Notes under the pieces: generated by a model | What the model saw: the letters and a program-made list of their open reading frames with translations, nothing else | Database searches by the model: none | What the model was told of the DNA's origin: nothing | Translations under genes and position numbers: made by a program | Virus record (IMG/VR): IMGVR_UViG_3300047445_000186 | Coordinates: 186,001 to 250,000 of that record | Length of the DNA: 64,000 nt | Direction: 5' to 3' (one strand) | Shown here: positions 7,333 to 35,904 of the stretch, in pieces | Position numbering within the stretch: position 1 is the stretch's first letter | Layout of the letters: every line of letters begins with the position of its first letter

Positions 7333-7831
7333 GGAATTCGAGAAGAATGACGTCATGAAGCGCAAGCACTTCACGAGGTTCTGATGTTCTAAATGTTTTT
7401 TCTTCAGTGAACTCTTTGCCGTTCACTTCGACCGAACCGAGACAGACGAGAAAAGCGCCGTGCATTGTCTGCATCTCGCCTTCCTTCAGCTCGTGCTTCG
7501 TAACAGTAGGAAGCTTCCCGTCGTTGATCTTTGCTGGGATGCAGATCCGGGTCGTTGGTTCGACGTACGTGATCTTGAACTCTCCACCTTGACCGACAAC
7601 CTCGTGTTCTGAAGACAGAACACCAGGAACCCGATCCTTGCGGAGAACACCATCCAACTCGAACTGAGCCCGACCCTTAGTGAACAGGGTCAGAGCTTCA
7701 GTCATCATTGAGTCGCCGTCAACCGTCTGCCAACACCCTTCAGGGAAGTCGCGGAACGTGATAATCCATTTGAACGCCCGCTTGATGCGGGTTTCATCTT
7801 TCTTATCTGCTCCGTGGAGGGTCTCGAGCAC
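7325..7831 (-). CDS. Hypothetical protein, possible cupin-like beta-barrel
   Basis: GTG start, 168 aa, beta-strand-rich pattern (AFLVCLGSVEVNG); coupled to the desaturase. Confidence 0.55.
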   Translation of the reverse strand: MLETLHGADKKDETRIKRAFKWIITFRDFPEGCWQTVDGDSMMTEALTLFTKGRAQFELDGVLRKDRVPGVLSSEHEVVGQGGEFKITYVEPTTRICIPAKINDGKLPTVTKHELKEGEMQTMHGAFLVCLGSVEVNGKEFTEEKTFRTSEPREVLALHDVILLEFHD

Positions 7832-7840
7832 GGCAGGACC

Positions 7841-8209
7841 TTAAGCTTGTGCTTCGCGGACTTCTTCGAGCACTTGATAGATCAGAGCGCGAAGGTACTC
7901 TTCTTGCCAGTCGCCAACAGTCTGAGCCACTTCAGGTGTAGCCACTTCCATGCTGGACTTGTCGACGGTAGTTGTGCCACCCAAGCCGACTTGAACGTCC
8001 GCGCTTGGCGTGACGTCTACGACACGCTGCCATTCAGTCGTTGGCGCATAGCTGCGAACGTGTTCTTCAACATTAACTCCCTCAGCAGGAATTGGAATGT
8101 TCAGTGAACGTGCGAGGCCTGGCGCGCCATCAGGCGTGTACTTCACGACCATGTGATGAGTAGCCATGTCAGTCGATTCAACGACCCAAGAGAAAACGAA
8201 AATTGTCAT
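7841..8209 (-). CDS. Hypothetical protein, possible tail-fibre accessory protein
   Basis: RBS AAGGA, TAAATA 22 nt upstream; follows the adhesin genes. Confidence 0.55.
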   Translation of the reverse strand: MTIFVFSWVVESTDMATHHMVVKYTPDGAPGLARSLNIPIPAEGVNVEEHVRSYAPTTEWQRVVDVTPSADVQVGLGGTTTVDKSSMEVATPEVAQTVGDWQEEYLRALIYQVLEEVREAQA

Positions 8210-19894: not shown

Positions 19895-19933
19895 CAGTTT
19901 CCCTATCCACCATTGGCATGATGAGCTAGCTCA

Positions 19934-21370
19934 TCAGTTGTTAAAAATTACAGCTTGAAACTTTAGTTGAGTACTGTTCGTTGATGCTGGCGTAACTAGA
20001 AGACGAACATTTGCGCTGCCGTCGTAATCAGCCGTAAAATCAACGAGATAAGTGCCACTCACAATGGTTCCATACTCTGAGATGTACACGTTATTCGAGT
20101 TCGTTCTACTGACCAGAATCTCTGTGAACATCACTGCACCTGACACAGTGTCAAGTACCTGAACAACATATTTAGCTGAGCGATACGTGCTCACTGGCCA
20201 TGAGTCGAGACTCACTTGCGTTACTGCTGCCGTGGTCAAAGCGCCAGCACGTTCACCGAACATCGCACCTGCTGAGAGCACGGTCGAAGTTGTTGTGCCT
20301 GTACCGAGCGCGATCGTTGGAGCTGCGAGCGAGCCGGCTGTCAGTGCACCTGCTACGGACAACGAACCGGCGATCGACGATGAACCCAGTCCAGACGTGG
20401 TCAGTGTGCCAGCGGTAATTGAAGCCTGAGTGTACAGTGGCAGATAATTCGGAGTGCCAGCCCCGTCGATCATCGTGAACCGATCGTTCGTCTCATCCCA
20501 GATGAACTTCACAATGCCATAATCACCGCGACGGACTTGGAAGCCGGCATCAGCGCTCGGAATACCTGTCGTGAATGAGCTGTTCAGCTCGATGATGTTA
20601 TCGGAGATCAGAACAGTCTGAGTGTTCACTGTAGTGGTCGTGCCAGAGAACGTGACATTTCCAGAGAACGTTTTGTTCCCGGCAATTGTCTGATCACCCG
20701 TAGTCCGAACAATCGTGCTGTCGCTGGAAGTCAGACCGTCAACGTACCCCTTGTTCACACCGTCTGTGGAGGTCGATGGATTCCCTACATTCAGTAGCTT
20801 CCGACCACCAAGGTCAATATCGTTCCCGAACAGGATCTTCACGCCTGCGGTATCGGTGATTACGCTTCCAGAGGTAATGTGTAGCGTGCCCTTGATAATC
20901 ACGGCACCACCAGCACCGGTCTGCAGTTCCAAATTACCGGTGCCAGACGTCTGAATTCGCAGATTCTGATTAATGTCCGTGCTGAACGTGATCGTGTCTG
21001 ACACATCCTCGAGGATCTTCTTGCCATTCATGTAGATCGAACCAGGACCTACGTAAATGTCGCGCCACATCATCGTTGGCGAGCCAAGATCGTACGTGAT
21101 GTTCGCAGTCGGAATGATGCTTGCCGACATGTTCAGATTGCCGGTCATCGTGCCGCCGGCTAGTGGCAGGTAAGCACCAGTAGCGCTCGAAAATCCAAGG
21201 CGTTGCCAAGAACCGTTCACATAAACGTGCATACCTTTGACTGAGGTATCCGCGTCAGAGCGAAAGAACAGTTCTCCTTCATCAGCCGAGCCAGGGAAGG
21301 AAGTGCCAGAGTTGATCACCGGATTGGTGAACTTCGAACCTTCTTCGAGTTGAATGCCGTGGAACTTCAT
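19934..21370 (-). CDS. Tail/baseplate-associated fibre-like structural protein
   Basis: Start MKFHGIQLEEGS (21370) aligns with MLIDRPQIVEGS of 10655-13339; DGVNKGYVD and GDQTIAGNKTF fibre motifs. Confidence 0.7.
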   Translation of the reverse strand: MKFHGIQLEEGSKFTNPVINSGTSFPGSADEGELFFRSDADTSVKGMHVYVNGSWQRLGFSSATGAYLPLAGGTMTGNLNMSASIIPTANITYDLGSPTMMWRDIYVGPGSIYMNGKKILEDVSDTITFSTDINQNLRIQTSGTGNLELQTGAGGAVIIKGTLHITSGSVITDTAGVKILFGNDIDLGGRKLLNVGNPSTSTDGVNKGYVDGLTSSDSTIVRTTGDQTIAGNKTFSGNVTFSGTTTTVNTQTVLISDNIIELNSSFTTGIPSADAGFQVRRGDYGIVKFIWDETNDRFTMIDGAGTPNYLPLYTQASITAGTLTTSGLGSSSIAGSLSVAGALTAGSLAAPTIALGTGTTTSTVLSAGAMFGERAGALTTAAVTQVSLDSWPVSTYRSAKYVVQVLDTVSGAVMFTEILVSRTNSNNVYISEYGTIVSGTYLVDFTADYDGSANVRLLVTPASTNSTQLKFQAVIFNN

Positions 21371-21396
21371 GTCTTGACCTGATGCTGGAACAGGAG

Positions 21397-21412
21397 TATT
21401 TAGGCATAAATA
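21397..21412. promoter_or_regulatory. Back-to-back TAAATA putative late promoters
   Basis: TAAATA on the minus strand at 21397-21402 and on the plus strand at 21407-21412, between divergent genes. Confidence 0.65.
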
Positions 21413-21432
21413 GCCCATACAAGGATTGATCT

Positions 21433-22326
21433 ATGTTCTCACTGCTGAAACAAATTCTCACCGAGGGTGGGAAAGCTACCGAAAAGCTCGGTACCGTTCG
21501 CGCCGATCAGGCTGCCATGAAGGCTGCGATCGAGTTCGTATCGAAGACCACTGGCATGAAGGCCTCTGTTCTGGCCGATCGACTGCTCGGCTCTGCTCGC
21601 CTGACGTACAACGGGAAGCAGAAAGACAGCGGTGACGTGGACATCGCCGTGAATGAAACGGAAGTCGATAAGGACTCGATCGTTCAGAAGATGACCGATG
21701 CATGCGGAAATCCTCCACACGTCACTGGTGGTTCGACGTACAGCTTCGCGGTTCCGGCTGGTGAGATCAAAGTTCAGGTTGACCTGATGTTCGTGCCTGA
21801 TGTCGATTGGGCAAAGTTCTCGCACTTCGCAGCAGAGAACAGCAAGCACAAGAGCGGCGTTCGTAATGAGCTGATTCACTCGGCCCTGAAGTACTCGATG
21901 AAGGCAGGTCAGGACGTTCGTGTGAAGGACAAGGAAGGGAACGACATCGTTCGCGCTTCGCGTGCGTACAAGCTGGACGTTGGTGTCGAGCGCCTGTTCA
22001 AGGTTGCCCCAATCCGCAAGGACGGCAAGGGTCGCGTGAAGGGCGTGAAGCCAGCGAATCCAGACGAAGTCGAGCAGACTCTAAAGGACCTCGGTCTGAA
22101 GCGGAACTTCAGCAAAGAACCTGACATCATTCGCGACCCGACCACGTTCGCGAACATGCTCTTTGGTCCAGACGTTTCGCCAGATGACATGGCCTCGACC
22201 GAGCAGATGATCGCGCTGATCGCGAAGTACAAGAAAAAGTACGCGGCCGAGATCTTCCGTGACGCGGTGAAGGGGATCAAGCGCCTGAAGTTCCCGGTTC
22301 CTGACGAACTGAAACAGTACGAGTAA
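21433..22326 (+). CDS. Pol-beta-superfamily nucleotidyltransferase-like protein
   Basis: LLGS-x9-SGDVDIAV and a later VQVDLMF (third acidic residue). Confidence 0.6.
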   Translation: MFSLLKQILTEGGKATEKLGTVRADQAAMKAAIEFVSKTTGMKASVLADRLLGSARLTYNGKQKDSGDVDIAVNETEVDKDSIVQKMTDACGNPPHVTGGSTYSFAVPAGEIKVQVDLMFVPDVDWAKFSHFAAENSKHKSGVRNELIHSALKYSMKAGQDVRVKDKEGNDIVRASRAYKLDVGVERLFKVAPIRKDGKGRVKGVKPANPDEVEQTLKDLGLKRNFSKEPDIIRDPTTFANMLFGPDVSPDDMASTEQMIALIAKYKKKYAAEIFRDAVKGIKRLKFPVPDELKQYE

Positions 22327-22364
22327 CCGACCGTTACGAAGTCTGGCCGGCCATGGTGTACAAT
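22323..22364 (+). promoter_or_regulatory. GTTAC(G)-N20-TACAAT promoter, copy 1
   Basis: GTAAC 22323, GTTACG 22333-22338, TG-TACAAT 22359-22364, ATG at 22370. Confidence 0.65.
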
Positions 22365-22369
22365 TTACC

Positions 22370-22687
22370 ATGACCAAACCATCTACCCCGCGGCAGATGA
22401 ACAAGACCGTGGCCGAGTACTTCGAGGCCAGTGGGTGGAGTTCGTCCCTGTTCGTCGAGCACGCGAAGTACGTGTTCGCAGAGCTCAAGGAAGCTCAGAT
22501 CATCATCGGCCGGACCGTGATCCACGTCGAAAAAGGTCCGAAGAAGATCAAAGTGTACGTGCACTACGCCGGGAAGTCGCGTGAATTCGTGACGATCACG
22601 GACCGGTACGGCATGCCGATCGAGGTGTACCACTACAAGTCCAGTCCTGAAGCTCTGCTGAAGGCGATCAGGGACCACCTGGTCTGA
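22370..22687 (+). CDS. Hypothetical protein (105 aa)
   Basis: Directly downstream of the TACAAT box; phage-like codon usage. Confidence 0.7.
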   Translation: MTKPSTPRQMNKTVAEYFEASGWSSSLFVEHAKYVFAELKEAQIIIGRTVIHVEKGPKKIKVYVHYAGKSREFVTITDRYGMPIEVYHYKSSPEALLKAIRDHLV

Positions 22688-22696
22688 CGGTGTTTA

Positions 22697-22727
22697 GCTA
22701 AACAAAAGAGGGACCCTAGGGTCCCTC
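22697..22727. terminator. Palindromic bidirectional terminator-like element, copy 2
   Basis: GAGGGACCCTAGGGTCCCTC 20-bp palindrome at 22708-22727 between convergent genes. Confidence 0.7.
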
Positions 22728-22754
22728 GGCTGTTTCTGGTGGCACGGTAAGTGC

Positions 22755-24599
22755 TTAGGCACCGCACTTGCACATGCCGGCCTTCAGCTCGTCGATCTGA
22801 GCTTGCTGGGCCTTCACAGCTTCAACGAGCAGACCAACCAAGTTACCGTACGCGACCGACAGGTAACCTTCTTCGTGCGTTTCAACAGCTTCAGGAGCGA
22901 CAGCAATGACGTCCTGAGCGATCAGACCAGTACCACGGATACCGTCGTGAATGCGGGTGAAGTTCACACCAGTAAGCTTCATGACCTTAGCGATCGCGTC
23001 TTCGATCGGCGTAATGTCCTTCTTAGCGCGGCGGTCAGAGAAAGCCGTGACGTTACCCTGAGCGGTGATCGCGCCACCAGCGTAGATGTTACCCGTCATC
23101 GAAGCGCCACCTGCAACACGAAGAGCGCCGTTGTCAGCGTTCCAGTTACCGGAGTTTGCACCGCTCTGAGCGATCAGGTACTGACCGTACGCGGCGTTCG
23201 TTGCCACGGTGTTCACACCTTGGACGTTACCCGTATTGGAAACGATAGCACCACCACCAGAAGTGATCTGACCAGTTGCGTAGATCGCACCAGCGGTCGA
23301 GATCGCGGATGTTGCGTGCGTGAACGTGATGCCGTTGATGACCAGATTGCCGGACATCGTGGAACCATCGCGACGGACGTAGTTCGCGTTCGCCACGGTT
23401 GCTGAGACGTATCCAACTGCATTGCCGAGCTGGCCAACTTCAGTCAGATTCTGATTGTCCCAGAGCGTTCCCCATGCACCCCACGAGCCGACTGTACCGC
23501 TGTCATCGTTCACACGGAAGCGCAGACCGCGAGCAGCAGTTTCTTCAAGGTTCCAGTTCGCTGCGATCTGCAGACCACGAGCGCCTGCTGGAGCAGATTG
23601 ACCCATCAGCGTCAGACCAACTTGGTATTGGCCGATGTCAGACGTGAAGTAGCTGTCAAAGCCGGAGATCGAGTAAGCGGGGAATGTCGTTGGAGCTGGG
23701 GAAGCGGTGCCTGCATCACCGAAATCATAGAACAGAGTTGGACGGCCGGAGACGCCAGTCCAAGGCACGTTCGATGCGTTCGTTGCATTGATCGCGTTCG
23801 TGGCGTTATTTGCGTTGTTCGCAGTAGATGCGTTCGTCGCGAATCCGACGCTCAGGGCGGATTGGGATGCCCACGTTGGAGCAGCAGCACCACCAGAGAG
23901 CAGGACTTGCAGCGCAACACCAGCGGCTGTCGTACCGATCTGCGAAGTGCTAGCGCCGTAAGCGACACCACCAGCGATCGTCGAAGTAGAACCCGTACCA
24001 CCGCGCGTGACAGCGAGGGTACCAGTCGCCATGTTCGATGCGTTCTGATAAAAAGCGCCTTGTTGACCGTCAAGCAGGTCAGCGTCAAGAGTCGAACCAG
24101 CGCCGTCATTGCCAGCGTGCCAGACTTGTTGACCGAGCCATGTCAGACCCGCATCGAGAGACTGAACGCTGATTCCAAGCCCTGGAGTGAGGGTGCCACC
24201 AGTCGACCAATTCGTACCTTGACCGATATTCAGATTGCCGTTCAGACCTTCGAGAACGACTGGCAGCGCGCCGCCATTCTGATTGCCGATCAGGATACGC
24301 TGAACACCGGTGTTCTTCGTGACGCGCAGAACATCAGGAACTGTCAGTGGGCCTGTCAGGACACCACCACCTGTGCTCAGGTACAGATCAGGCGAAACGG
24401 CCGAGGTCCAACCTTGTTGAACTTGCGAGCCGAACTGGCCTGGGTTCGAGTCCTTGATGAACCCGAACAGGTACAGACCCGACGAACCGCCGATCGCGCT
24501 GTCTGTTTTGTAGAACAATGCACCGTCTGATGCTTGTCCTACGGTAGGCAGCGTCGGACCGTAAGAAATGAGTGCGCCGCCGTTGAGGATCTTTGCCAT
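22755..24599 (-). CDS. Tail fibre with C-terminal S74 chaperone
   Basis: Start MAKILNGG with GGAG RBS and TAAATA at 24635-24640; LDADLLDG, TLAVTRGGTG, FSDRRAKKDI...VAYGNLVGLLVEAVK. Confidence 0.85.
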   Translation of the reverse strand: MAKILNGGALISYGPTLPTVGQASDGALFYKTDSAIGGSSGLYLFGFIKDSNPGQFGSQVQQGWTSAVSPDLYLSTGGGVLTGPLTVPDVLRVTKNTGVQRILIGNQNGGALPVVLEGLNGNLNIGQGTNWSTGGTLTPGLGISVQSLDAGLTWLGQQVWHAGNDGAGSTLDADLLDGQQGAFYQNASNMATGTLAVTRGGTGSTSTIAGGVAYGASTSQIGTTAAGVALQVLLSGGAAAPTWASQSALSVGFATNASTANNANNATNAINATNASNVPWTGVSGRPTLFYDFGDAGTASPAPTTFPAYSISGFDSYFTSDIGQYQVGLTLMGQSAPAGARGLQIAANWNLEETAARGLRFRVNDDSGTVGSWGAWGTLWDNQNLTEVGQLGNAVGYVSATVANANYVRRDGSTMSGNLVINGITFTHATSAISTAGAIYATGQITSGGGAIVSNTGNVQGVNTVATNAAYGQYLIAQSGANSGNWNADNGALRVAGGASMTGNIYAGGAITAQGNVTAFSDRRAKKDITPIEDAIAKVMKLTGVNFTRIHDGIRGTGLIAQDVIAVAPEAVETHEEGYLSVAYGNLVGLLVEAVKAQQAQIDELKAGMCKCGA

Positions 24600-24666
24600 T
24601 TGTGCTCCAGGACTTCTGGGTAAATTCGATCCAGTATTTAGCCCGAACCTCCTCTCTGGACGAACT

Positions 24667-24688
24667 TGTAACGTCTGTTCGTTACAAT
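24667..24688 (+). promoter_or_regulatory. TGTAAC-N8-GTTACAAT promoter/operator
   Basis: Inverted repeat whose right arm overlaps a TACAAT -10 box, 21 nt upstream of 24710. Confidence 0.6.
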
Positions 24689-24709
24689 TGAACATTCATA
24701 GGAGAGTAC

Positions 24710-25762
24710 ATGGAACATATGCAATTGGGGCATCTGAACAACGATTTTCGGACGTGCCTGCATCATCTGAATGCGCACGGCATGACTGCGCACCCACGTG
24801 GAACGACCACGAAAGAGCTGCTGAATTACAACATTTCGCTCGGCGATCCACGCAATCGGATCATCAATTTCCCTGATCGGAAGACCAATCTGAAGTACCT
24901 GCTCGGTGAATTCTGCTGGTATCTCGCTGGTGACAACGACCCTGACAGCATCATCCCGTACAGCAAGTTCTGGGACAACATCCGCAATTCTGGCGACATG
25001 CCGGGATACGCGAAGGGCACGATCAATTCGAACTACGGCTATCGTCTGTTCGGTCTGGACAACGAGATGCTCGTTCCGCATGTCGAGAAGGCAATGACTC
25101 CGTACGGTTGCGATGAGACCGGTGCAGTCGTGATCGAGCCGCATGAGACGACAGTGATTCGTGGTCAGAGCCAGTGGGCAGCAGTAGTCGACATGCTCAA
25201 GGCCGACAAGGATTCGCGTCAAGCGATCATGAACATCCATCGCCCAAGTGATCGTCACGTCGGGAACAAGGACGTTGCATGTACCCTGACCCTGCAGTTC
25301 TTCATTCGTGAGAACAAGTTGTTCATGATCACGAACATGCGATCGAACGACATCATTCTCGGCTTCACGAACGACGTGTTCCAGTTCACGATGCTGCAAG
25401 AAGGCCTGATGGTTCAACTGCGTGAAACGTACCCTGAGCTTGAGCTCGGCGCGTACTACCACAATGCAGGTTCGATGCACATCTACGACAGGCACTTCGA
25501 GATGGCGAACAAGATCGTCGCTGACGAACGAGCACTCGAGCTGTCAATGGTTCCAATGGATCGATTCGACTCCGAGATTCTGGACAGCCTGGTCGAGATT
25601 GAAACTGAGTGGCGCAAGGACGGCATGAAGAAGGACTTCAACTTCAATCTGTACACCTCGTACCAGAAGCTCACACCGTACTGGCAGAACCTGATTCAAA
25701 TGTGCTTCGCCGAAGATGGTGAAGCAATGCACGCCGTGTTCGGCATCCCAGAGGAGCATTGA
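24710..25762 (+). CDS. T4 gp42-like dCMP hydroxymethylase/hydroxylase (thymidylate synthase fold)
   Basis: INSNYG, DSRQAIMNIHRPS, catalytic ACT, MRSNDIILGFTND (Asp at the dCMP-specifying position, like gp42 D179) and NAGSMHIYDRHF. Confidence 0.85.
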   Translation: MEHMQLGHLNNDFRTCLHHLNAHGMTAHPRGTTTKELLNYNISLGDPRNRIINFPDRKTNLKYLLGEFCWYLAGDNDPDSIIPYSKFWDNIRNSGDMPGYAKGTINSNYGYRLFGLDNEMLVPHVEKAMTPYGCDETGAVVIEPHETTVIRGQSQWAAVVDMLKADKDSRQAIMNIHRPSDRHVGNKDVACTLTLQFFIRENKLFMITNMRSNDIILGFTNDVFQFTMLQEGLMVQLRETYPELELGAYYHNAGSMHIYDRHFEMANKIVADERALELSMVPMDRFDSEILDSLVEIETEWRKDGMKKDFNFNLYTSYQKLTPYWQNLIQMCFAEDGEAMHAVFGIPEEH

Positions 25763-26617: not shown

Positions 26618-28363
26618 ATGAGATACGAAAAACAAATTCTCGAGGCGTACGATCGCCTTGAGTTCAAACCACGTGGTCGTCAGGTCGAAGACATCGACAC
26701 GATCATGACCTCGTTCCTCGATGAGGGATTCAAGACCGTGATTCTGTCGGCTCCGACTGGCACGGGTAAGTCGATCATTGGTGCCGTTACTGCTGAAGCT
26801 CTGCACCGCATTCGCTGGCCGGATCTGAACGCGAACGCGAGCTTCTTGCTCACGCCAACGAACATTCTGTCTCAGCAGTACCACGACACCTTCCAAGAAG
26901 GACGTGATCCGAATGACACGCGTTTCCGGATGATCAAGGGCGCTGGGAACTTCCCATGCGAGGCTCTTAGCACGGAGTCTGAACCGCAGACCGCCGAGTC
27001 GTGCGCGCTCCGTCTGTTCCAGAAAGAGCAGATGACTTCGATGATCGACACGTTCTGCAATGGATGTGACTTCGCCCATCAGAAGAAGATGCGTGACAAG
27101 TCGCGCCATCTGATCACGAACTACGCGTACTACTTCATCGATCGGATGTACATGGAGATGCTCGCGAAGCGAACCGTGTGCGTGTTCGACGAAGCGCATT
27201 TGCTGAACGATCTGTTCACCGAGCACAACGCGATCTACTTCAGCGATTCGCGTCTGAAGAAGATGGCCGAGGAAATCAACGAAGGCCTATCGCTCGGGCA
27301 CACTGAAGTGTTCAAGATCCTGAAGACGGTGAAGACGGATCTGAATGCCGGGAAGATCAACGATCAGACGTACATGAACTATCTGCACCAGCTTGCAGAC
27401 GCGTACGGGCAAGTCACTGAAGCGGCTCAAGAAGCGGCTGAACGTGAAGTGCGGAATCCGAAGAAGTACCTGCAACTCTCGCGCCTGTCGAAGAAGTACT
27501 TCGGCCTTGGCTGCAAGATTGGTGACCTTGTTGAGTACGGGTACCCACATGCATTCGAGTACAAGGAACGGAATCCGAAGTTCAATCAGCACGAAGACGA
27601 AATCTCCGTGAAGCCAATCTTCGTTGGCGACATGTTCGACAAGCTGATCAACGCAGATTACAACCTACTGATGTCGGCAACGTTCAGCGAGCAGTTCGCT
27701 CGTCGTACCCTGACCCTCGAGAACGCGAAGCACATCCGTCTGCAACCTTCGTTCCCGAAAGAGAACAAGAAGGTCGTGTTCTACAAGCCGCAGAATCTGA
27801 ACTTCACCTCGCTGAAAGAGTCGAAGACAGTGAAGCAGCTTCAAGCGACCTGCTACGAGATCGCGAAGCACCACACCGACAAGGGTGAACGTGGTATCGT
27901 GCTCGCTCCGAGCTTCGCGCTGAATGAAGGCATTGCCGCTGCGTTCGACGTGATGGGTCTGAAGGCACGAGTGTTCGAGCACAAGCGCGGTGAGAAGCTC
28001 GCTGAAGTTCTGGGTCGATTCAAGCGACACACTGACGGACCTGCAGTGATGCTCACTCCGTCTGGCTTCGAGGGTATGGACTTGGCTGGTGATCTGAGCC
28101 GTTATCAGATCATCTTGAAGGCACCGTTCGGTTCGCTGGGTGAAGCGCGGATGAAGAAGATTCTGGCAACGTGGCCTGACATTTACTCGCTGCTTTGCAC
28201 GATGAAGCTCGTTCAAGGTGCTGGTCGTTCGGTCCGTGGGCCAGATGACTACGCCACGACGTACATGCTCGACACGAACATTCAGCGTCTCTGGACAGCG
28301 AAGAACATGGAATGGGCTGATGAGTTCCAGACGATCTTCACTTCGATGCTGAGCGACGACTAA
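26618..28363 (+). CDS. DinG/Rad3-like SF2 helicase
   Basis: SAPTGTGKS, FDEAHLL, LMSATF, GFEGMDL and QGAGRSVRGPDD. Confidence 0.85.
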   Translation: MRYEKQILEAYDRLEFKPRGRQVEDIDTIMTSFLDEGFKTVILSAPTGTGKSIIGAVTAEALHRIRWPDLNANASFLLTPTNILSQQYHDTFQEGRDPNDTRFRMIKGAGNFPCEALSTESEPQTAESCALRLFQKEQMTSMIDTFCNGCDFAHQKKMRDKSRHLITNYAYYFIDRMYMEMLAKRTVCVFDEAHLLNDLFTEHNAIYFSDSRLKKMAEEINEGLSLGHTEVFKILKTVKTDLNAGKINDQTYMNYLHQLADAYGQVTEAAQEAAEREVRNPKKYLQLSRLSKKYFGLGCKIGDLVEYGYPHAFEYKERNPKFNQHEDEISVKPIFVGDMFDKLINADYNLLMSATFSEQFARRTLTLENAKHIRLQPSFPKENKKVVFYKPQNLNFTSLKESKTVKQLQATCYEIAKHHTDKGERGIVLAPSFALNEGIAAAFDVMGLKARVFEHKRGEKLAEVLGRFKRHTDGPAVMLTPSGFEGMDLAGDLSRYQIILKAPFGSLGEARMKKILATWPDIYSLLCTMKLVQGAGRSVRGPDDYATTYMLDTNIQRLWTAKNMEWADEFQTIFTSMLSDD

Positions 28364-28409: not shown

Positions 28410-29528
28410 ATGGCAAATCAACCTCTCGCAAGAAAAGCAAAGCGCGAGCAGAAGGCAACACGCTCCACCCGCCGCCGACTGTCAGATAATCCCAGACACG
28501 CAGTTTACGAAGACAACTTCATGGATGAACCACAACTAGAAAATTCGCGGAACGCAGGGCCTGATGGCGTTGTGTTCGGTGTGTACGGTCTCGATGACTG
28601 GGTCACGAACACATACCTCCGAAATGCCGTCGAAAAAGGCATGAACACCCTCAGCCTTGAGGGCACATGGATCACCCCGTCGAGCTGGAAGCTCCATGAG
28701 TGGGTCACGGCGAAAGCTGAGCGATTCAACTTCATGTCGGCCAATCGTGCTCTCGCATGGTTCAGCTGGGGCATGATCGAACTGACCCTGACATCGGGTA
28801 AGCTCTGCATCGAGCTGAACGGTACGCCAGAAGAAGTCGTCGCATTCGTTGCATCGGTTGACGGTGAAATGAAGCGCGCCGAGAATCTGATCGAGTGGAT
28901 CTACAACACGAAGGGCGACAGCATCTCGGTTCCGCTGAACTATCGTGCAGCAGTTCCAGGCGCGTACCCTTGGCTCCCAACGGAGATCGGTGAGTACATC
29001 GACGGGTACATGAACTCGAACGCGAGTGTGCTCGTTCTGATCGGCCCTCCAGGCACCGGCAAGACGTCGTTCATCAAGCAGCTCATTCACCGCTCTGGCA
29101 GTGACGCGAAGATCACGTACGACGAGAAGGTCATGAGCGACGACTCGCTGTTCGCAGGGTTCGTGGAAGACGATGCAAAGTTCCTGATCATGGAAGATGC
29201 GGACGCATTCCTGAAGAGCCGAGCCGATGGGAACACGATGATGCATCGCTTCCTGAACGTGTCGGATGGTTTGATCTCGGCCCGCGACAAGAAGCTCGTG
29301 TTCAGCACGAATCTCCCGTCGATCCGTGACATCGATGACGCGCTTCTCCGGGCTGGTCGCTGCTACGACGTGATCGAGTTCCGTGCTCTCACGCGAGCTG
29401 AAGCCGAGCCAGTGGCTGCCGAGCTTGGGCTGGAGCTCCGAGATGGTGCCGAGTTCACACTGGCCGAGCTGTTCAATGAGCAACCTTCCAGTGGTCGTAA
29501 AAATGTTCGAAAGGTCGGATTCGTATGA
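28410..29528 (+). CDS. AAA-family ATPase
   Basis: Walker A GPPGTGKT, Walker B IMEDAD, FSTN sensor and LLRAGRC arginine finger. Confidence 0.85.
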   Translation: MANQPLARKAKREQKATRSTRRRLSDNPRHAVYEDNFMDEPQLENSRNAGPDGVVFGVYGLDDWVTNTYLRNAVEKGMNTLSLEGTWITPSSWKLHEWVTAKAERFNFMSANRALAWFSWGMIELTLTSGKLCIELNGTPEEVVAFVASVDGEMKRAENLIEWIYNTKGDSISVPLNYRAAVPGAYPWLPTEIGEYIDGYMNSNASVLVLIGPPGTGKTSFIKQLIHRSGSDAKITYDEKVMSDDSLFAGFVEDDAKFLIMEDADAFLKSRADGNTMMHRFLNVSDGLISARDKKLVFSTNLPSIRDIDDALLRAGRCYDVIEFRALTRAEAEPVAAELGLELRDGAEFTLAELFNEQPSSGRKNVRKVGFV

Positions 29529-29716: not shown

Positions 29717-30006
29717 CAACGATCTCGTCCCGCAAGGGGACGACTTCAAATAGCCTGACGTTCGATGACCTAACCGACGCAGAGCTCGAGCTGATCTCGG
29801 CCTTGGTCTACAATGTACGACTCGGCAAGGGAAGTATCTATCGCGAAGCTGCGTACGATCTGATGAACAAGATCGAATCCTTCAAGCAGGACGATGACTA
29901 CATCAGCCGAGCCAGTGCACTCGTGGACCCTGAATGTGATGTGCTTGACAGCCATGGCACGCCAGCGTTCACGATCCGTAATCAAGACTACGAAGTCGTC
30001 GTATGA
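29713..30006 (+). CDS. Hypothetical protein
   Basis: ATGA overlaps on both sides. Confidence 0.65.
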   Translation: MTTISSRKGTTSNSLTFDDLTDAELELISALVYNVRLGKGSIYREAAYDLMNKIESFKQDDDYISRASALVDPECDVLDSHGTPAFTIRNQDYEVVV

Positions 30007-30590
30007 GCATAAACAAATTTCTGATCGAGGGTCTCGATCGTCTCGGCAAAGACACCCTGATCGATGGGATCATGCACCAGCGCGGGTACCATCAGGTCCT
30101 GCACTTCTCGAAGCCACGTCATCTCGCTCGGTACATGCCAAGCCCAACGGGCATGACTGCAGCCGAGATGGAGAGTGTCTCGTTCAAGGAGTACCAAGAG
30201 CAATCGTTCAGGACAATGTTCGCGATGCTCCGCAATCTGCCGTACACTCAGATCATTTGCAATCGGGCGCACCTTGGCGAATGCGTGTACGCTCCCCTGT
30301 ACCGCGGGTACGCAGGCGAGTACGTGTTCGACATCGAGAAGCAGTTCTTGAAGGGCGATTCGCGAACCATTCGTCTGATCCTGCTCACTGAAGACTTCAG
30401 CGTGTCGAAGCACTTCGTCGATGACGGTGAGTCATTCGACATCGCAAAGCGCGAGCAAGAGCAGGACCTGTTCAAGGCTGCGTTCGAGAAGTCGTGCATC
30501 AGTGACAAGCGAATCGTGAACGTCACCGATCGCGAAACTGGCGGCTATCGCTCGAAGCAAGACATTCTGCTTGAGGTCACCTCACTATGA
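30003..30590 (+). CDS. dNMP (thymidylate-kinase-like) kinase
   Basis: P-loop IEGLDRLGKDT, ICNRAHLGECVYAPLYRG. Confidence 0.75.
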   Translation: MSINKFLIEGLDRLGKDTLIDGIMHQRGYHQVLHFSKPRHLARYMPSPTGMTAAEMESVSFKEYQEQSFRTMFAMLRNLPYTQIICNRAHLGECVYAPLYRGYAGEYVFDIEKQFLKGDSRTIRLILLTEDFSVSKHFVDDGESFDIAKREQEQDLFKAAFEKSCISDKRIVNVTDRETGGYRSKQDILLEVTSL

Positions 30591-31371: not shown

Positions 31372-31394
31372 CTCCTTTGGATTTGGGGAACTCT

Positions 31395-31835
31395 ATGACA
31401 CTAATATTTGAAATCAAAGCGGCCCAATTGGCCGCTCGTAAAGAACGTCGGGCAGCGGATGTTGCTGTGCTGACGACCCTGATCGGTGAGGCGGAAATCA
31501 TCGGCAAGAACGATGGAAATCGCGCAGTCACGGACCAGGAAGTGCAGGCCGTAATTAAGAAGTTCATCAAGAATATCGATGAGGTTCTGAAGGTCGTAAA
31601 TCCTGGGTCTGATCAATTCACGACCGCTCAGGAAGAGAAGATTCTTCTGAGCACGTTCCTGCCTGTGCAGCTCTCTGAAGCTGACCTGCGGCTGATCATT
31701 CAAACCGTGATCGATGCACATCAGCTCGTGGCTCCAAAGGGTCTCGGTGTTCTGATGAAGGAACTGAAGGACTCGCATAACGGCACGTACGATGGTGCGC
31801 TTGCCTCGAAACTTGCAAAGGAATTGTTGAAGTGA
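31395..31835 (+). CDS. GatB/YqeY-domain protein
   Basis: EEKILLSTFLPVQLSEADL, GVLMKELK and YDGALAS match the YqeY pattern. Confidence 0.8.
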   Translation: MTLIFEIKAAQLAARKERRAADVAVLTTLIGEAEIIGKNDGNRAVTDQEVQAVIKKFIKNIDEVLKVVNPGSDQFTTAQEEKILLSTFLPVQLSEADLRLIIQTVIDAHQLVAPKGLGVLMKELKDSHNGTYDGALASKLAKELLK

Positions 31836-33001
31836 AAGTTGGTGTAGTTAAACTTGGTGCTCGCATTACCTGGGAAACCGACGCAGCTGTCGGTCCTGGT
31901 GAAGCGATCTCGATCTGCAAGGCACTCACGCGAGGTGGGGCTGAGGTCCATGTGTTCACGAAGATTCTGGCGAAGGACACGCTCGATCCGTCGATTCAGT
32001 GGCACAATACGGTTGGCAGCGATGCACGTTCAATCCATGCAGGTCAAGACCTCGACACGACCGGTCTCGATGCTCTGCTCGTGATTAACGGGAATGTGAA
32101 CTTCTTCGGTGGCGCCGAAGATCGTGCTCAGATTCTGAATTACACGATCATCAATCGGTTCGCGGGTCCGGTGATCTACGTGATGTGCGACCCTGAACTG
32201 CCGATGCTGCAGATCTGGGAGAACGTCTCGAAGAAGCAAGTCGATCCGAAGTACAACTGGGAGAACGTGTACGCTGAGTCGGACATTCGTGTCACGAAGC
32301 CGATCAATGTGCTCTGCCAGCCGTTCAATGTTCAGGCAATGCAGGAAACGTGGAAGAGCAAGAAGGGCGCTGTGCCACTCGGCACGATGTTCCACTTCCC
32401 GATGGAACGCTTCCCGCTCCTGAACGAGTGGCTAGATTACGCCGAAACTCCGGCAGTCGATCTGCTCTACGGCGGTACGGCTCGTGGTGGGCGCCGCATT
32501 CCGAATCTGTACAAGTGGTACTGCGGTCTGCCTGAAGATCTGAACGTCGAAATCTTCGGCAAGATCGACAATGAAGACTTCGAGAAGCACAACAAGATCG
32601 GGAAGCTTCCAGTGAAACGGTACCCAACGTTCACGGGTATGGTGAAGTACTCTGAAGTGCTACCAAAGATGAACAACGCTCTTGCGCATCTGGTCACTGG
32701 CGATCCGTCGTACGAAACGCTCGATCTGATTCCTCAACGCGTTGCCGAGTGCATCGCCGCTGGGAACATCGTGTTCATCGACGCGAACATCGACAAGAGC
32801 CGTCGGATCTATCCTGTTGGAACCGAGGCGCATGACTTCCTGTACGTGCAGACGCAAGATGAACTCGTCGAGCGACTGCGTGTGCTGAAGGAAGAGCCAA
32901 GTCTGCGCTCCACTCTGTGGCAGCAACAGACGATCGCAACGAACTTCAACGCCGACACGTTCACAAAGTCGTTGGTCACGAAGATCGCGGAGTTCGTATG
33001 A
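31832..33001 (+). CDS. bgt: T4 beta-glucosyltransferase-family DNA glycosyltransferase (GT-B)
   Basis: Colinear with T4 BGT: LLVINGNVNFFGG, DLLYGGTARGGRR, VEIFGK, PTFTG, FIDANIDKSRRI. The sugar donor is not established. Confidence 0.85.
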   Translation: MKVGVVKLGARITWETDAAVGPGEAISICKALTRGGAEVHVFTKILAKDTLDPSIQWHNTVGSDARSIHAGQDLDTTGLDALLVINGNVNFFGGAEDRAQILNYTIINRFAGPVIYVMCDPELPMLQIWENVSKKQVDPKYNWENVYAESDIRVTKPINVLCQPFNVQAMQETWKSKKGAVPLGTMFHFPMERFPLLNEWLDYAETPAVDLLYGGTARGGRRIPNLYKWYCGLPEDLNVEIFGKIDNEDFEKHNKIGKLPVKRYPTFTGMVKYSEVLPKMNNALAHLVTGDPSYETLDLIPQRVAECIAAGNIVFIDANIDKSRRIYPVGTEAHDFLYVQTQDELVERLRVLKEEPSLRSTLWQQQTIATNFNADTFTKSLVTKIAEFV

Positions 33002-33186
33002 CCAGGAAGCAGGAGCTCGAATCTCTTGCTCGCAAGAAGGATGCATTCATGACACAACACGAAATTATCGAAGCGCTCGAAGAGATCATCCGTGAAGCGG
33101 ATGAGCGGGATGATTTTCCCGAAGTGCCACAAGGCATGGTTGAGACCTGGACTCTACAAAGTCTGATCAACAGGATCAAGAAGTAA
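32998..33186 (+). CDS. Hypothetical protein (62 aa)
   Basis: ATGA-coupled to bgt. Confidence 0.65.
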   Translation: MTRKQELESLARKKDAFMTQHEIIEALEEIIREADERDDFPEVPQGMVETWTLQSLINRIKK

Positions 33187-33198
33187 TAAAATGGGGTC

Positions 33199-33693
33199 AT
33201 GCCTTCTCTGAACCAATTCAAGAAGCTTGACCCCGAGCTTCGTAAAGACCTGATCGAGCGAGTGATCCTTCGTAAGAAGCGATTCCTCGCTCTGACTGGC
33301 AAGCGTGGTACGTTCGATCCGTCGACGTGCGACGTTCTGCTGGTTGGCGATCGACCGGCCCCATCGGCCCCTGATGACGCGAATTTCCATTACACTCCAT
33401 TCGGTGCCCTCTGGAACTCCTCGTTGTACGTGAACATGGAACTACACAAGGGCGGAATCGATGAAGCTCGGTTGGCCTGGGTGAACTCGGCCGACTTCCA
33501 TGGCGTGCCTCAAGACTATTCGGTTCTCGATCTGCCGTGGAAACACGTGATCGCTCTCGGAGGAGCGGGATCGAAGTGGCTGAAAAAATCGCCGCAGAAA
33601 ATTCCGCACGAAATTTTTCACCACCCCAGTTCTTGGAAACGATTCCACTCCAAGGAACCGTACCCGCTGATTGACTACCTGAAGACGATATGA
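33199..33693 (+). CDS. Uracil-DNA-glycosylase-superfamily fold protein
   Basis: Ordered motifs DVLLVGDRP, PF, WVNS, VIALG and HHPS. Confidence 0.6.
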   Translation: MPSLNQFKKLDPELRKDLIERVILRKKRFLALTGKRGTFDPSTCDVLLVGDRPAPSAPDDANFHYTPFGALWNSSLYVNMELHKGGIDEARLAWVNSADFHGVPQDYSVLDLPWKHVIALGGAGSKWLKKSPQKIPHEIFHHPSSWKRFHSKEPYPLIDYLKTI

Positions 33694-33974
33694 CCCCGAA
33701 GATTCTTGCGCGCATGATCACCCCACGTCCGTTCTACGCGATGTGGCAGCGGGGGCTTGTCACGCAAGATGGTCGAACATTCGAGTGGATGAACCGTCAG
33801 CCGTATTACACACGCAATCTCGAGGTTGGTGATCGCGTATGGATCGCGAAGCGCCTCCCTGTTTCAGGATACGACTGGTGCTTTGAGGTCTATCAGATCA
33901 CGATCGAGCAGACCGATTACGGCACGCCAAAGCTCTGGCTTGGCAAAGGTCGGCAACTGCTCTTGCCCACCTGA
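33690..33974 (+). CDS. Hypothetical protein, possible PUA/ASCH/EVE-like fold
   Basis: LEVGDRVWIAK motif; weak. Confidence 0.5.
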   Translation: MTPKILARMITPRPFYAMWQRGLVTQDGRTFEWMNRQPYYTRNLEVGDRVWIAKRLPVSGYDWCFEVYQITIEQTDYGTPKLWLGKGRQLLLPT

Positions 33975-34042: not shown

Positions 34043-34729
34043 ATGCACTTCAACACCCCTACACTGGTCACTCTGACCGCCCCATCTTGCGCTGGCAAGA
34101 GTTACCTGCTCGAGGCAATGGTTGACAGCCTTGGCATGCAGCGTATTGTGTCCACCACTGATCGCGCTCCACGAGCCGGTGAAATCGAAGGTGTGCACTA
34201 CAACTTCATCACGACGAACGAATCTCTGCAGTACGAAGCTGAAGGAAAGTTCGCCGAGCTTGTGACGTTCAATGGCACTCGGTACGGTGTCACTCACGAG
34301 GAAATGGAGAAGAAGCTCGTTCCTGGTGCACCAGCTCCGATCGTGATTCTCGAGCCGAACGGTGTGAACATCTACCGCCAGTACTGTGGTTCGAAGAACT
34401 GGTCGATCTTCACCGTGTTCGTCTCGACGCCTGAAGCCGTTCGCCTTGAACGCCTCGCTGCTCGTACCACTGCTGATCTGCTGAACATTGCAGTGAATGG
34501 CGGTGATCTGGAGAAGAGCCTTCTTGCACGCGGCAATTTGTTCGACCGGTTCGAGAAGATCGTTCACGCGAACAACAAGCGCCTGAAGGCGATCATCGAA
34601 CAAGAACGTCTCTGGGCTGCCACGAACCTGTGGGATGCGCAGATCACAGGTCAAGACCTGAACGTTGCACTCTCGCACCTGAAGCAATCGATCGCCAGCC
34701 GTAACGCCCGCTCCGCAATCTACGCCTAA
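34043..34729 (+). CDS. gmk: Guanylate-kinase-family NMP kinase
   Basis: APSCAGKS P-loop, STTDRAPRAGEIEGVHYNF and TFNGTRYG. Confidence 0.85.
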   Translation: MHFNTPTLVTLTAPSCAGKSYLLEAMVDSLGMQRIVSTTDRAPRAGEIEGVHYNFITTNESLQYEAEGKFAELVTFNGTRYGVTHEEMEKKLVPGAPAPIVILEPNGVNIYRQYCGSKNWSIFTVFVSTPEAVRLERLAARTTADLLNIAVNGGDLEKSLLARGNLFDRFEKIVHANNKRLKAIIEQERLWAATNLWDAQITGQDLNVALSHLKQSIASRNARSAIYA

Positions 34730-35101: not shown

Positions 35102-35383
35102 ATGACAAAAGCAATCAACAAAGCACTGCAAACCCCTGAAGCCCAAGCTCTCCTGGCCGCTGGCCTGAAGCTGAAGTCGACCAAGCGTCAACTCGCGAAC
35201 GGCACGATCGCCCTGACCGGCCGCGTGAAGAAGCGCGCTGTGTCGTACAAGATCACGGCCACTGGTTCGGTCTTGAGCAATGAGTTCGTCGCTCGTCGCG
35301 TTCTCGAATCCACCGAAGGTCAACTGTACCGCGCTGGTCTCCGCGCTGCTGCTGAACTGCTCGCCAAGCGCAAGGCTGCCTGA
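35102..35383 (+). CDS. Hypothetical basic protein
   Basis: RBS AAGGAA; strong codon bias. Confidence 0.75.
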   Translation: MTKAINKALQTPEAQALLAAGLKLKSTKRQLANGTIALTGRVKKRAVSYKITATGSVLSNEFVARRVLESTEGQLYRAGLRAAAELLAKRKAA

Positions 35384-35904
35384 TGCAGTTGTACACCGCT
35401 CCCGAGCCCGTACCGTTCGGCCTTGATCCAGTTCCGTCTGTGTTCTTGGCTGGTTCGATCGAGCAGGGTACCGCAATTGACTGGCAGCACGAAGTGCTGG
35501 ACGAGATCAGCGATCTGCGGGTAGTGGTGTTCAACCCACGACGCAAGGCATGGGACGCGTCGTGGGTGCAATCAATCGACAACCCTCAGTTCAACAAGCA
35601 AGTGAACTGGGAGCTCGACAATCTGTCTCGTTCAGACATCGCGTTCTTCTACTTCGATCCAAAGACGAAGTCGCCAATCACGCTCATGGAACTTGGTTTC
35701 ATGCTTGGCCAATCCATGCAAGGTGGATGGTACGAGATCATCGTGGTTTGCCCAGACGGCTTTTGGCGTCAAGGGAATGTCGAGATCATGTGTGCTCGAG
35801 CCGTCGTGGCTGATGGCACTCGCGTTTCGTACGTGACCGAGCTTGACGCAGGGATTTCGATTCTACGCGACGACATTGAACGCCAGCTGGAACGCGCGAT
35901 TTAA
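35383..35904 (+). CDS. Nucleoside 2-deoxyribosyltransferase-like protein (NDT/DNPH1/MilB superfamily)
   Basis: SVFLAGSI, FNPRR, QVNWELDNL and SPITLMELG. Confidence 0.8.
   Translation: MQLYTAPEPVPFGLDPVPSVFLAGSIEQGTAIDWQHEVLDEISDLRVVVFNPRRKAWDASWVQSIDNPQFNKQVNWELDNLSRSDIAFFYFDPKTKSPITLMELGFMLGQSMQGGWYEIIVVCPDGFWRQGNVEIMCARAVVADGTRVSYVTELDAGISILRDDIERQLERAI

What the first reader, a model, noticed from the sequence alone, without database searches (positions are those of the whole stretch)
33199..33974. UDG-fold protein and possible modified-base reader directly behind the DNA glycosyltransferase
Seen: after bgt and a 62-aa ORF comes a 164-aa protein with UDG-superfamily motifs in order, but with GDRP in place of the usual GEAP/GQDP and no Fe-S cysteines. 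It is coupled to a 94-aa ORF with a weak PUA/EVE-like signature. Inference: a quality-control or discrimination module for modified DNA. It could remove deaminated modified cytosine, attack unmodified host DNA, or recognise the sugar-modified base.
Basis: inference. Interest (0 to 1): 0.62.

Follow-up and report, generated by a model that had tools for sequence, protein, structure and literature searches.

The report
Phage UDG-fold enzyme tied to hydroxymethylcytosine DNA
A jumbo phage that replaces cytosine with sugar-decorated hydroxymethylcytosine encodes, next to its DNA glucosyltransferase, a previously unclassified uracil-DNA-glycosylase-fold enzyme. Relatives of this enzyme occur almost only in phages that make modified cytosine and are often fused to a nucleotide kinase; the small neighbouring gene is not a recognisable modified-base reader.

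Summary

Its family has 1275 cluster representatives and is essentially phage-only. Across 234 diverse members it keeps a motif-A acid, the stacking Phe, the Asn and the motif-B His-Pro plus Arg, so it looks catalytic.

Linkage to bgt holds only in the closest jumbo-phage clade. The broader link is to a dCMP-modifying thymidylate-synthase homolog:
- Such a homolog lies beside ORF-A relatives in 32 of 69 viral loci.
- It is present in 10 of 10 complete or near-complete genomes checked.
- About 30 loci carry an in-frame fusion to a TMK-like kinase that is homologous to window gene 30003-30590.

Best reading (about 0.45): a monofunctional DNA glycosylase for uracil-type bases (U, 5-hmU, possibly glucosyl-hmU, but not T). 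It would keep cytosine-replaced phage DNA free of deaminated or misincorporated pyrimidines. The substrate is inferred, not shown.

ORF-B (33690-33974, 94 aa) is a real, translationally coupled gene with one known homolog. No PUA/EVE fold was found.

Verdict: a new variant of a known kind, moderately interesting.

The parts
33199..33693 (+). ORF-A, 164 aa: UDG-superfamily-fold protein of an unclassified, phage-restricted family. Predicted active-site residues are D51 (motif A, GDRPAP), F68, N96 and H142-P143 with K147-R148 (motif B).
33690..33974 (+). ORF-B, 94 aa: small beta-rich protein of unknown function, translationally coupled to ORF-A by an ATGA overlap. It is lineage-specific.
   Evidence: One homolog only, at the syntenic position in L002 (33-37% identity, E 6e-10). 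AF2 pLDDT 65.7. No PUA/EVE match.
32998..33186 (+). 62-aa ORF between bgt and ORF-A. This slot is variable: other loci hold unrelated small ORFs here, or none.
   Evidence: no tblastn hit in 69 loci.
31832..33001 (+). DNA beta-glucosyltransferase homolog (T4 BGT family).
   Evidence: PF09198 3.7e-17; phrog_7922 4e-46.
30003..30590 (+). TMK-like P-loop nucleotide kinase, the counterpart of the kinase that is fused to the UDG-fold domain in about 30 other phage loci.
   Evidence: hhalign of fused-kinase profile A3 against A4: 96.7%, E 3.7e-10, 80 columns. It lies directly upstream of the ORF-A homolog in L020, L021 and L027.
34043..34729 (+). Guanylate-kinase-like P-loop kinase, the conserved downstream neighbour in the jumbo clade.
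   Evidence: PF00625 4.8e-15; phrog_1815 1.4e-28. Synteny. It shares only the P-loop with the fused kinase.
24710..25762 (+). Thymidylate-synthase homolog of dCMP hydroxymethylase type (L143D, D169 kept, N177D in E. coli ThyA numbering). It supplies 5-hydroxymethyl-dCMP.
   Evidence: Best PDB matches are MilA at 7e-27 and T4 dCMP hydroxymethylase at 1e-16. Signature residues; criteria from PMC13326640.
61458..62366 (+). Canonical thymidylate synthase ThyA. It shows that thymine is kept in this phage's DNA.
   Evidence: PF00303 334 bits; LPPCH and PYNIAS motifs.

Best explanation
ORF-A is a catalytically competent, monofunctional DNA glycosylase of the UDG superfamily. It belongs to a phage-specific family, without an Fe-S cluster, that resembles family 4 and UdgX in fold and SMUG1 in its likely substrate range.

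Proposed mechanism (inferred): the enzyme flips a pyrimidine out of DNA. The base stacks on F68, and N96 reads its uracil-type O4/N3-H face. H142 stabilises the O2 oxyanion, and D51 positions the attacking water. K147 and R148 fill the gap left in the duplex.

Proposed substrates (inferred): uracil-type bases that should not be in a genome whose cytosines are all 5-hydroxymethylated and glucosylated. These are 5-hmU and possibly glucosyl-hmU from deamination of the modified cytosine, and U or 5-hmU misincorporated because the phage's own dCMP deaminase and promiscuous kinases make dUMP and hm-dUMP. Thymine must be spared, because the phage keeps ThyA. Host AP endonuclease, polymerase and ligase would complete the repair.

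Proposed coupling (inferred from gene fusion): the enzyme works beside the TMK-like nucleotide kinase of the modified-dCMP pathway, probably at or near the replisome.

Shown: the fold, the conserved active-site residues, the phage restriction of the family, the link to dCMP-modifying TS homologs, and the kinase fusion. Inferred: glycosylase activity, substrate, physical coupling to the kinase, and biological role.
For: Fold:
- AF2 pLDDT 95.4.
- All 50 best Foldseek PDB hits are UDG-superfamily members.
- BFVD and the ESM atlas return phage UDGs and UDG clusters.

Active site, across 234 diverse members, fused and standalone alike:
- motif-A acid 229/234 (D164, E65)
- P67 227, F68 232
- N96 234/234
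- H142-P143 234/234
- R148 234/234, K147 217

Uracil-type rather than cytosine-type base: Brig1, the UDG-fold enzyme that excises glucosyl-hmC, has Glu where UDGs have Asn (PMC11078745, section 10). Here the Asn is invariant.

Room for a 5-substituent: motif A reads G-[DE]-x-P-[AG]-P, with a small residue where family 1 has the Tyr that blocks C5 (with established UDG knowledge).

Pathway link:
- 29 neighbouring TS homologs all carry Asp at the ThyA-N177 position, and nearly all carry D/E at L143.
- Seven of seven complete jumbo genomes that hold a homolog in other contexts have such an enzyme, as do RsoM2USA, AXL3 and the window's own genome.
- AXL3 DNA resists every G/C-site restriction enzyme tested (PMC7504290).

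Kinase link:
- About 30 of 69 loci are in-frame kinase-UDG fusions.
- The fused kinase is homologous to window gene 30003-30590.

Need for the activity: the own genome has a dCMP deaminase, but no PF00692 dUTPase and no canonical PF03167 UDG.
Against: - No biochemical data exist for any member.
- Fold plus conserved residues does not prove hydrolysis: UdgX crosslinks instead, and vaccinia D4 serves as a replisome subunit.
- An Asn can in principle read cytosine if its amide is flipped, so the argument from Asn is suggestive only.
- A lytic phage gains little from repairing rare spontaneous deamination, which makes the strict conservation and the kinase fusion hard to explain by repair alone.
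- No phage AP endonuclease was found (PF03372, PF01261).
- The predicted ORF-A and TMK-like kinase complex gave no answer.
- The pocket geometry could not be inspected with the tools at hand.
Confidence: 0.45

Rival explanations
1. Cytosine-directed 'modification police'. On this reading ORF-A excises unmodified cytosine, and 5-substituted cytosines are sterically excluded. Host DNA, and any phage DNA that has incorporated plain C, would be riddled with abasic sites. That would make the enzyme a glycosylase analogue of T4 endonucleases II and IV.
For: - Every complete genome with the family replaces cytosine: a dCMP hydroxymethylase-type TS is present in 10 of 10 genomes.
- The gene sits in or is fused to the pathway that makes the replacement nucleotide.
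- A single substrate, plain C, would explain its presence beside hydroxymethylase-, 5hoC-synthase- and methylase-type TS homologs alike.
- The UDG fold can excise cytosine derivatives, as Brig1 shows (PMC11078745).
Against: - The base-reading residue is an invariant Asn (234/234).
- The two known cytosine-excising UDG-fold enzymes carry an acid there: Brig1 E147 (PMC11078745) and the engineered human UNG N204D (established knowledge).
- Excising cytosine would also waste the dCMP that the hydroxymethylase needs.
- No natural cytosine-DNA glycosylase of this kind is known.
Confidence: 0.15
2. A non-hydrolytic role. The UDG fold would serve as a base-flipping or DNA-tethering module. It might hold the nucleotide kinase, and perhaps BGT, on replicating DNA, much as vaccinia D4 is a polymerase processivity subunit. 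Alternatively it might bind free pyrimidine nucleotides as a regulatory or substrate-selecting domain of the kinase.
For: - The in-frame fusion to a kinase with intact P-loop and DR motifs is widespread.
- UDG-like domains are often attached to phage family-A DNA polymerases (BFVD hits).
- UdgX binds dUMP (6ajp).
Against: - All the residues needed for catalysis, and not only those for binding, are invariant in both fused and standalone forms.
- D4 itself keeps its glycosylase activity.
- No complex with the kinase was predicted, although that result counts neither for nor against binding.
Confidence: 0.15
3. An ordinary uracil-DNA glycosylase. On this reading its position near bgt and the kinases reflects only that phage nucleotide- and DNA-metabolism genes cluster together, and it has no special relation to cytosine modification.
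For: - The canonical UDG catalytic set is conserved.
- In about 12 loci the homolog lies between the terminase and the gp32 / UvsX / UvsY replication-recombination genes, with no modification gene within 6 kb.
Against: - The genomes in that last group that could be checked whole also encode a dCMP hydroxymethylase-type TS elsewhere.
- In DNA without plain C, uracil cannot arise by deamination.
- The family is absent from cellular genomes: 4 MAG contigs among 185,579 species.
- It escapes the Pfam UDG model.
Confidence: 0.15

Closest known systems
Family 4 UDG and UdgX (e.g. PDB 4zbx, 1ui0, 6iod)
   Same: - Motif A starts G-E/D.
- The Phe after motif A, the Asn at the end of strand 2, the motif B His-Pro and a following Arg are all shared.
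   Different: - ORF-A has no 4Fe-4S cysteines.
- It is about 30 residues shorter and has its own N-terminal helix.
- It lacks the UdgX R-loop His.
- There is no detectable sequence similarity: profile against PDB gives 0 hits at E<=10, and Pfam PF03167 is not matched.
- The family is phage-restricted.
SMUG1 (family 3 UDG)
   Same: - Same superfamily fold (hits).
- The motif-A pattern x-P-[AG]-P resembles GMNPGP.
- The proposed substrate range (U, 5-hmU and 5-hoU, but not T) is the established range of SMUG1.
   Different: - SMUG1 has Asn, not an acid, at the catalytic motif-A position.
- It is a cellular repair enzyme and is larger.
- Specificity for 5-substituted uracils is only inferred for ORF-A.
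Brig1, bacterial anti-phage glycosylase (PMC11078745)
   Same: - It is a UDG-superfamily fold acting in the world of glucosyl-hmC phage DNA.
   Different: - Brig1 is host-encoded and excises alpha-glucosyl-hmC.
- It uses Glu147 where ORF-A has the invariant Asn.
- ORF-A is phage-encoded and must spare the phage's own modified cytosine.
Vaccinia D4 and the UDG-like N-terminal domains of phage family-A DNA polymerases
   Different: Here the fusion partner is a TMK-like nucleotide kinase, not a polymerase or a processivity factor.
T4 endonucleases II and IV (denA, denB)
   Same: They would be functional analogues only if the rival 'unmodified-C' reading is right. They are phage enzymes that destroy cytosine-containing DNA while hmC DNA is spared.
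   Different: They are nucleases with unrelated folds, and there is no homology.

Membership tests
UDG superfamily (fold level) | Alpha/beta fold with a four-stranded parallel sheet | tested here: met
   [not shown]
UDG superfamily | Motif A directly after strand 1, with the water-activating or polar residue | tested here: met
   G50-D51-R52-P53. The Gly is present in 228/234 members and an acid (D or E) in 229/234.
UDG superfamily | Aromatic residue that stacks on the flipped base, and an Asn at the end of strand 2 that reads the base | tested here: met
   F68 232/234; N96 234/234. The positions agree with the secondary structure. Their placement in the pocket was not inspected in 3D.
UDG superfamily | Motif B (His-Pro-...) after strand 4, with an intercalating or plugging residue | tested here: met
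   H142-P143 234/234; K147 217; R148 234/234.
UDG superfamily | Match to the curated sequence model (Pfam PF03167) | tested here: not met
   No hit for ORF-A at E<=1 or in the six-frame own genome. The RsoM2USA homolog scores only 18.7 bits, below the 24.3 cut-off. The A1 profile finds no PDB sequence.
UDG superfamily | N-glycosidic bond cleavage of a base in DNA | not testable with these tools
   This needs an enzyme assay.
Family 4 UDG | Four cysteines binding a 4Fe-4S cluster | tested here: not met
   There is one Cys (C44), and it is not conserved.
PUA / EVE / ASCH modified-base readers (for ORF-B) | PUA-like beta-barrel fold or a family-model match | tested here: not met
   - No Pfam, PHROG or NCBIfam hit.
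- Foldseek best E 0.57, prob 0.08.
- The PUA-like atlas row scores 0.78, which is noise level.
- Caveat: the model is only pLDDT 65.7, built from two sequences, so a distant relationship is not excluded.
aGPT-Pplase / 5-HMUDK thymidine hypermodification system | Helix-hairpin-helix glycosylase-like transferase working with a 5-hmdU DNA kinase on hmU DNA | tested here: not met
   - ORF-A has a UDG fold, not the HhH fold (PMC8989533).
- The associated TS homologs are cytosine-specific (N177D), not dUMP hydroxymethylases.
- Thymine is kept, since ThyA is present.

The most novel reading that the evidence does not exclude
ORF-A and its roughly 1300-cluster family are natural cytosine-DNA glycosylases that remove only unmodified cytosine. 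They would give phages with fully replaced cytosine a way to destroy host DNA and to proofread their own genome for lapses in modification. The kinase fusion would couple this policing to the supply of the replacement nucleotide.
Probability: 0.15. Interest if true: 0.9.

Novelty: new variant of a known kind. Interest (0 to 1): 0.6.

Why it matters
Phages with hypermodified cytosine are being mined for restriction and CRISPR evasion and for enzymes used in epigenetic sequencing. This work defines a large family of UDG-fold enzymes that current annotation does not recognise: Pfam, PHROGs and NCBIfam are blank, and the cultured-phage copies are labelled 'hypothetical' or 'thymidylate kinase'. 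In the genomes examined the family tracks dCMP hydroxymethylase-type pathways, and it is often fused to the pathway's kinase.

If the enzyme removes 5-hmU or glucosyl-hmU, it would be the first phage-encoded quality control for modified-cytosine DNA. It would also be a compact, Fe-S-free glycosylase that could be useful for mapping 5-hmU or base J. If it instead removes plain cytosine, it would be a new host-takeover weapon and a natural counterpart of engineered cytosine glycosylases.

Two cultured phages carry it, Stenotrophomonas AXL3 and Ralstonia RsoM2USA, so the question can be tested directly.

Tried and rejected
- **Sequence-level annotation.** Pfam, PHROGs, NCBIfam and PDB sequence searches, with a single sequence and with a profile, gave nothing for ORF-A or ORF-B. 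A weak NiFe-hydrogenase match (E 0.03) and a Kelch-design match for ORF-B were dismissed as chance.
- **Near-identical phage DNA.** None was found in the phage collection.
- **Thymidine-hypermodification idea** (UDG-like domain as partner of a 5-hmdU DNA kinase, or an aGPT-Pplase analogue). Rejected. The aGPT-Pplases have an HhH fold (PMC8989533), the linked TS homologs are cytosine-specific, and thymine is kept.
- **5-hydroxycytosine pathway** (PMC13326640) for this phage. Rejected for the window, whose TS homolog keeps D169. The D169N signature appears only beside two fused homologs (L040, L051).
- **Predicted complex of ORF-A with the TMK-like kinase.** The verdict was 'no answer' (ipSAE 0.00), which is evidence neither for nor against binding.
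- **Unknown 395-416 aa protein after the ORF-A homolog in L020 and L027, tested as a divergent BGT.** hhalign probability 2% and no PDB hit, so this is not shown.
- **Promoter and terminator scan.** Nothing above the shuffled expectation.
- **AP endonuclease families in the phage genome.** None found.
- **Literature.** No paper in the held library describes a kinase-UDG fusion or this family. Iyer et al. 2013 could not be read.
- **Not used.** Read laying and the look-up of sequencing runs were not used. No alternative genetic code was needed.

Full report
**What is there**

The window is bases 186001-250000 of a 331,776-bp IMG/VR virus record that is 94% complete, i.e. a jumbo phage. The region of the finding holds a co-directional run of genes:
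- an XPD-like helicase (26618-28363)
- an AAA ATPase (28410-29528)
- a TMK-like P-loop kinase (30003-30590)
- a 130-aa ORF
- a YqeY-like protein (31377-31835)
- a T4-type DNA beta-glucosyltransferase (31832-33001; PF09198 3.7e-17, phrog_7922 4e-46)
- a 62-aa ORF (32998-33186)
- ORF-A (33199-33693, 164 aa)
- ORF-B (33690-33974, 94 aa)
- a guanylate-kinase-like protein (34043-34729)
- a nucleoside 2-deoxyribosyltransferase-like protein (35383-35904)

ORF-A's stop and ORF-B's start overlap as ATGA.

**ORF-A has a UDG fold**

ORF-A has no hit in Pfam, PHROGs, NCBIfam or PDB sequences. A profile of 43 homologs also finds no PDB sequence at E<=10.

With that alignment AlphaFold2 gives a confident model, pLDDT 95.4 and pTM 0.89.
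- All 50 best Foldseek matches in the PDB are UDG-superfamily proteins: UdgX, family 4, SMUG1, SMUG2 and family 1. Probabilities are about 1.0, although E-values are only about 1e-3.
- BFVD and the ESM atlas return phage UDGs, UDG-like N-domains of phage PolA, and viral 311-340-aa clusters, one of which carries Thymidylate_kin in 45% of its members.

The motif positions fit the fold:
- GDRPAP follows strand 1.
- PF starts the next helix region.
- N96 ends strand 2.
- HP follows strand 4.

There is one non-conserved Cys, so no Fe-S cluster.

**The family is large, phage-restricted and looks catalytic**

The word search found 46 close homologs, all metagenomic and several on contigs of 140-340 kb. 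The exhaustive profile search found 1275 cluster representatives at E<=1e-3 and 601 at E<=1e-10. Many of these are 280-330 aa long, with the domain at the C-terminus.

Across 234 non-identical members (79 fused, 139 standalone) the conservation is as follows:
- motif-A acid D/E in 229
- F68 in 232
- N96 in 234
- H142-P143 in 234
- R148 in 234
- K147 in 217

A scan of one genome for each of 185,579 prokaryotic species found only four MAG contigs. The phage's own genome has no canonical UDG.

**Linkage: bgt locally, dCMP modification and a kinase globally**

*Jumbo clade.* In the closest relatives (47-60% identity; L002-L006, L010-L014) the order helicase, AAA, TMK-like, (YqeY), BGT, (small ORF), ORF-A, (small ORF), GK-like is kept. 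Whole-region synteny is kept there too, so adjacency alone says little.

*Next relatives.* In L020, L021 and L027 the homolog directly follows the TMK-like kinase. It is itself followed by an NAD epimerase, an unknown 395-416-aa protein and a UDP-galactopyranose mutase, with no BGT.

*Fused form.* In about 30 loci the domain is the C-terminal half of a 289-404-aa protein whose N-terminal half is a P-loop kinase. This protein is flanked by a TS homolog, a dCMP deaminase, a MazG-like pyrophosphatase and a methyltransferase. Stenotrophomonas phage AXL3 gp29, annotated 'thymidylate kinase', is such a fusion.

*Which window kinase matches.* Profile-profile comparison shows the fused kinase is homologous to the window's TMK-like kinase: 96.7%, E 3.7e-10, with shared EG-D-GK and DR...E..Y motifs. 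With the GK-like protein it shares only the P-loop. Its best solved relative is YorR. YorR is also the hit reported for the 'nucleotide kinase' in the published 5-hydroxycytosine clusters (PMC13326640, Table 1).

*Other contexts.* Some loci show terminase, ORF-A, gp32, UvsX, UvsY. Another group shows a weak 2OG-oxygenase-like neighbour.

**Which modification**

All 29 TS homologs next to family members, AXL3 gp28 and the window's own enzyme (24710-25762) carry Asp at the position of E. coli ThyA N177, which marks cytosine specificity. All but one carry D/E at L143, which marks the hydroxymethylase type. Only L040 and L051 carry D169N, the published signature of 5-hydroxy-dCMP synthases, and L039 keeps Leu143, the methylase type (criteria from PMC13326640 sections 24 and 28).

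The window enzyme's best solved relatives are MilA (7e-27) and T4 dCMP hydroxymethylase (1e-16).

All seven complete jumbo genomes whose homolog sits in another context also encode an L143D/N177D TS homolog elsewhere. The three records without one are 31-55% complete. RsoM2USA has one too.

AXL3 DNA is cut only by the two tested enzymes with A/T-only sites and resists 35 enzymes with G/C in their sites (PMC7504290). Canonical ThyA, or ThyX in AXL3, is also present, so thymine is kept.

The window phage therefore most likely makes 5-hmC and glucosylates it. Its dCMP deaminase and MazG-like genes lie elsewhere in the genome, and it has no PF00692 dUTPase.

No background rate of N177D TS homologs in phages without the family was measured, so the association is strong but not formally tested.

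**How it most likely works**

The full canonical UDG residue set is invariant, which argues for catalysis rather than mere binding.

The base-reading residue is Asn in every member. Brig1, the UDG-fold defence enzyme that excises alpha-glucosyl-hmC, uses Glu at that spot, and mutating it abolishes activity (PMC11078745, section 10). Engineered cytosine-excising UNG likewise needs Asn-to-Asp (established knowledge). This favours a uracil-type substrate.

In DNA without plain C, such bases are 5-hmU or glucosyl-hmU from deamination, or U and 5-hmU misincorporated through the phage's own deaminase and kinases. Thymine must be spared. The small residue in motif A (P-[AG]-P, as in SMUG1's GMNPGP), where family 1 has the C5-blocking Tyr, is compatible with 5-substituted uracils.

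I therefore put a SMUG1-like clean-up glycosylase for cytosine-replaced DNA first, at about 0.45, functionally coupled to the TMK-like kinase.

The rivals each stand at about 0.15:
- A glycosylase for unmodified cytosine. This is attractive because one substrate would fit all three TS chemistries, but the invariant Asn disfavours it.
- A non-hydrolytic tether or nucleotide-binding role beside the kinase.
- An ordinary UDG with no special tie to the modification.

**ORF-B**

ORF-B is a real gene. It has a 33-37% identical homolog at the same position in L002 (E 6e-10) and is translationally coupled to ORF-A. No other relative exists in the 5.8-billion-protein index. The slot is empty or holds unrelated small ORFs in other relatives.

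My working guess, at low confidence, is a clade-specific accessory or modulator of ORF-A. It is not part of the conserved module.

**Verdict**

What emerges is a phage-specific, Fe-S-free UDG-superfamily family that in the genomes examined accompanies dCMP-modifying TS homologs and is frequently fused to the pathway's kinase. This is a new variant of a known kind, with a substrate question that can be tested directly in two cultured phages.

Noticed in passing
L007 (Stenotrophomonas phage AXL3, NC_071036) 6389-8162: gp29, annotated 'thymidylate kinase', is a TMK-like kinase plus UDG-fold fusion. gp28, annotated 'thymidylate synthase', has KDVPCT and PYDVFNF (L143D, N177D), so it is a dCMP hydroxymethylase-type enzyme. 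This fits the published resistance of AXL3 DNA to all G/C-site restriction enzymes. The base itself has not been identified.
   Followed up: partly
L040 7256-7969 and L051 3103-3873: These TS homologs beside kinase-UDG fusions carry D169N together with L143E and N177D. That is the published signature of 5-hydroxy-dCMP synthases, so the UDG-fold family also accompanies 5-hydroxycytosine pathways. L039 6375-7739 keeps Leu143 with N177D (dCMP methylase type).
   Followed up: partly
L020 / L021 6557-10141; L027 6576-10508: Downstream of the ORF-A homolog lie an NAD-dependent epimerase, an unknown 395-416-aa protein (phrog_14998) and a UDP-galactopyranose mutase. This looks like a different DNA-sugar pathway in the place held by BGT in the window. 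The unknown protein could not be shown to be a glycosyltransferase.
   Followed up: partly
window 30003-30590: The TMK-like kinase has an unusual Walker A, GLDRLGKDT, with Asp rather than Ser/Thr after the Lys. It is invariant in eight homologs (alignment A4).
   Followed up: no
window 35383-35904: This nucleoside 2-deoxyribosyltransferase-like protein (PF15891, 2e-29; phrog_30579) is conserved three to four genes downstream of ORF-A in L011-L013. Its role in the modified-nucleotide economy is unknown. The pairing is reminiscent of MilA and MilB in mildiomycin synthesis.
   Followed up: no
L001 (Ralstonia phage RsoM2USA, MG752970) 5989-6447; L096: This cultured jumbo phage has an ORF-A homolog annotated 'hypothetical' (33% identity). 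It also has a dCMP hydroxymethylase-type TS (KDVPCT / GNDAPCF) far away in the genome, and an RNA ligase gene lies two genes downstream of the homolog.
   Followed up: partly
window 16964-24695, minus strand: Large tail-fibre and baseplate-like genes (976 aa with repeated collagen-like or fibre PHROG matches; 646 aa resembling a long tail fibre distal subunit) lie immediately upstream of the nucleotide-metabolism block.
   Followed up: no
L033 4785-5363 and related loci L032, L034, L047: In one group of loci the gene just upstream of the ORF-A homolog matches the anti-CBASS protein Acb1 (PF23474, 2.9e-17).
   Followed up: no
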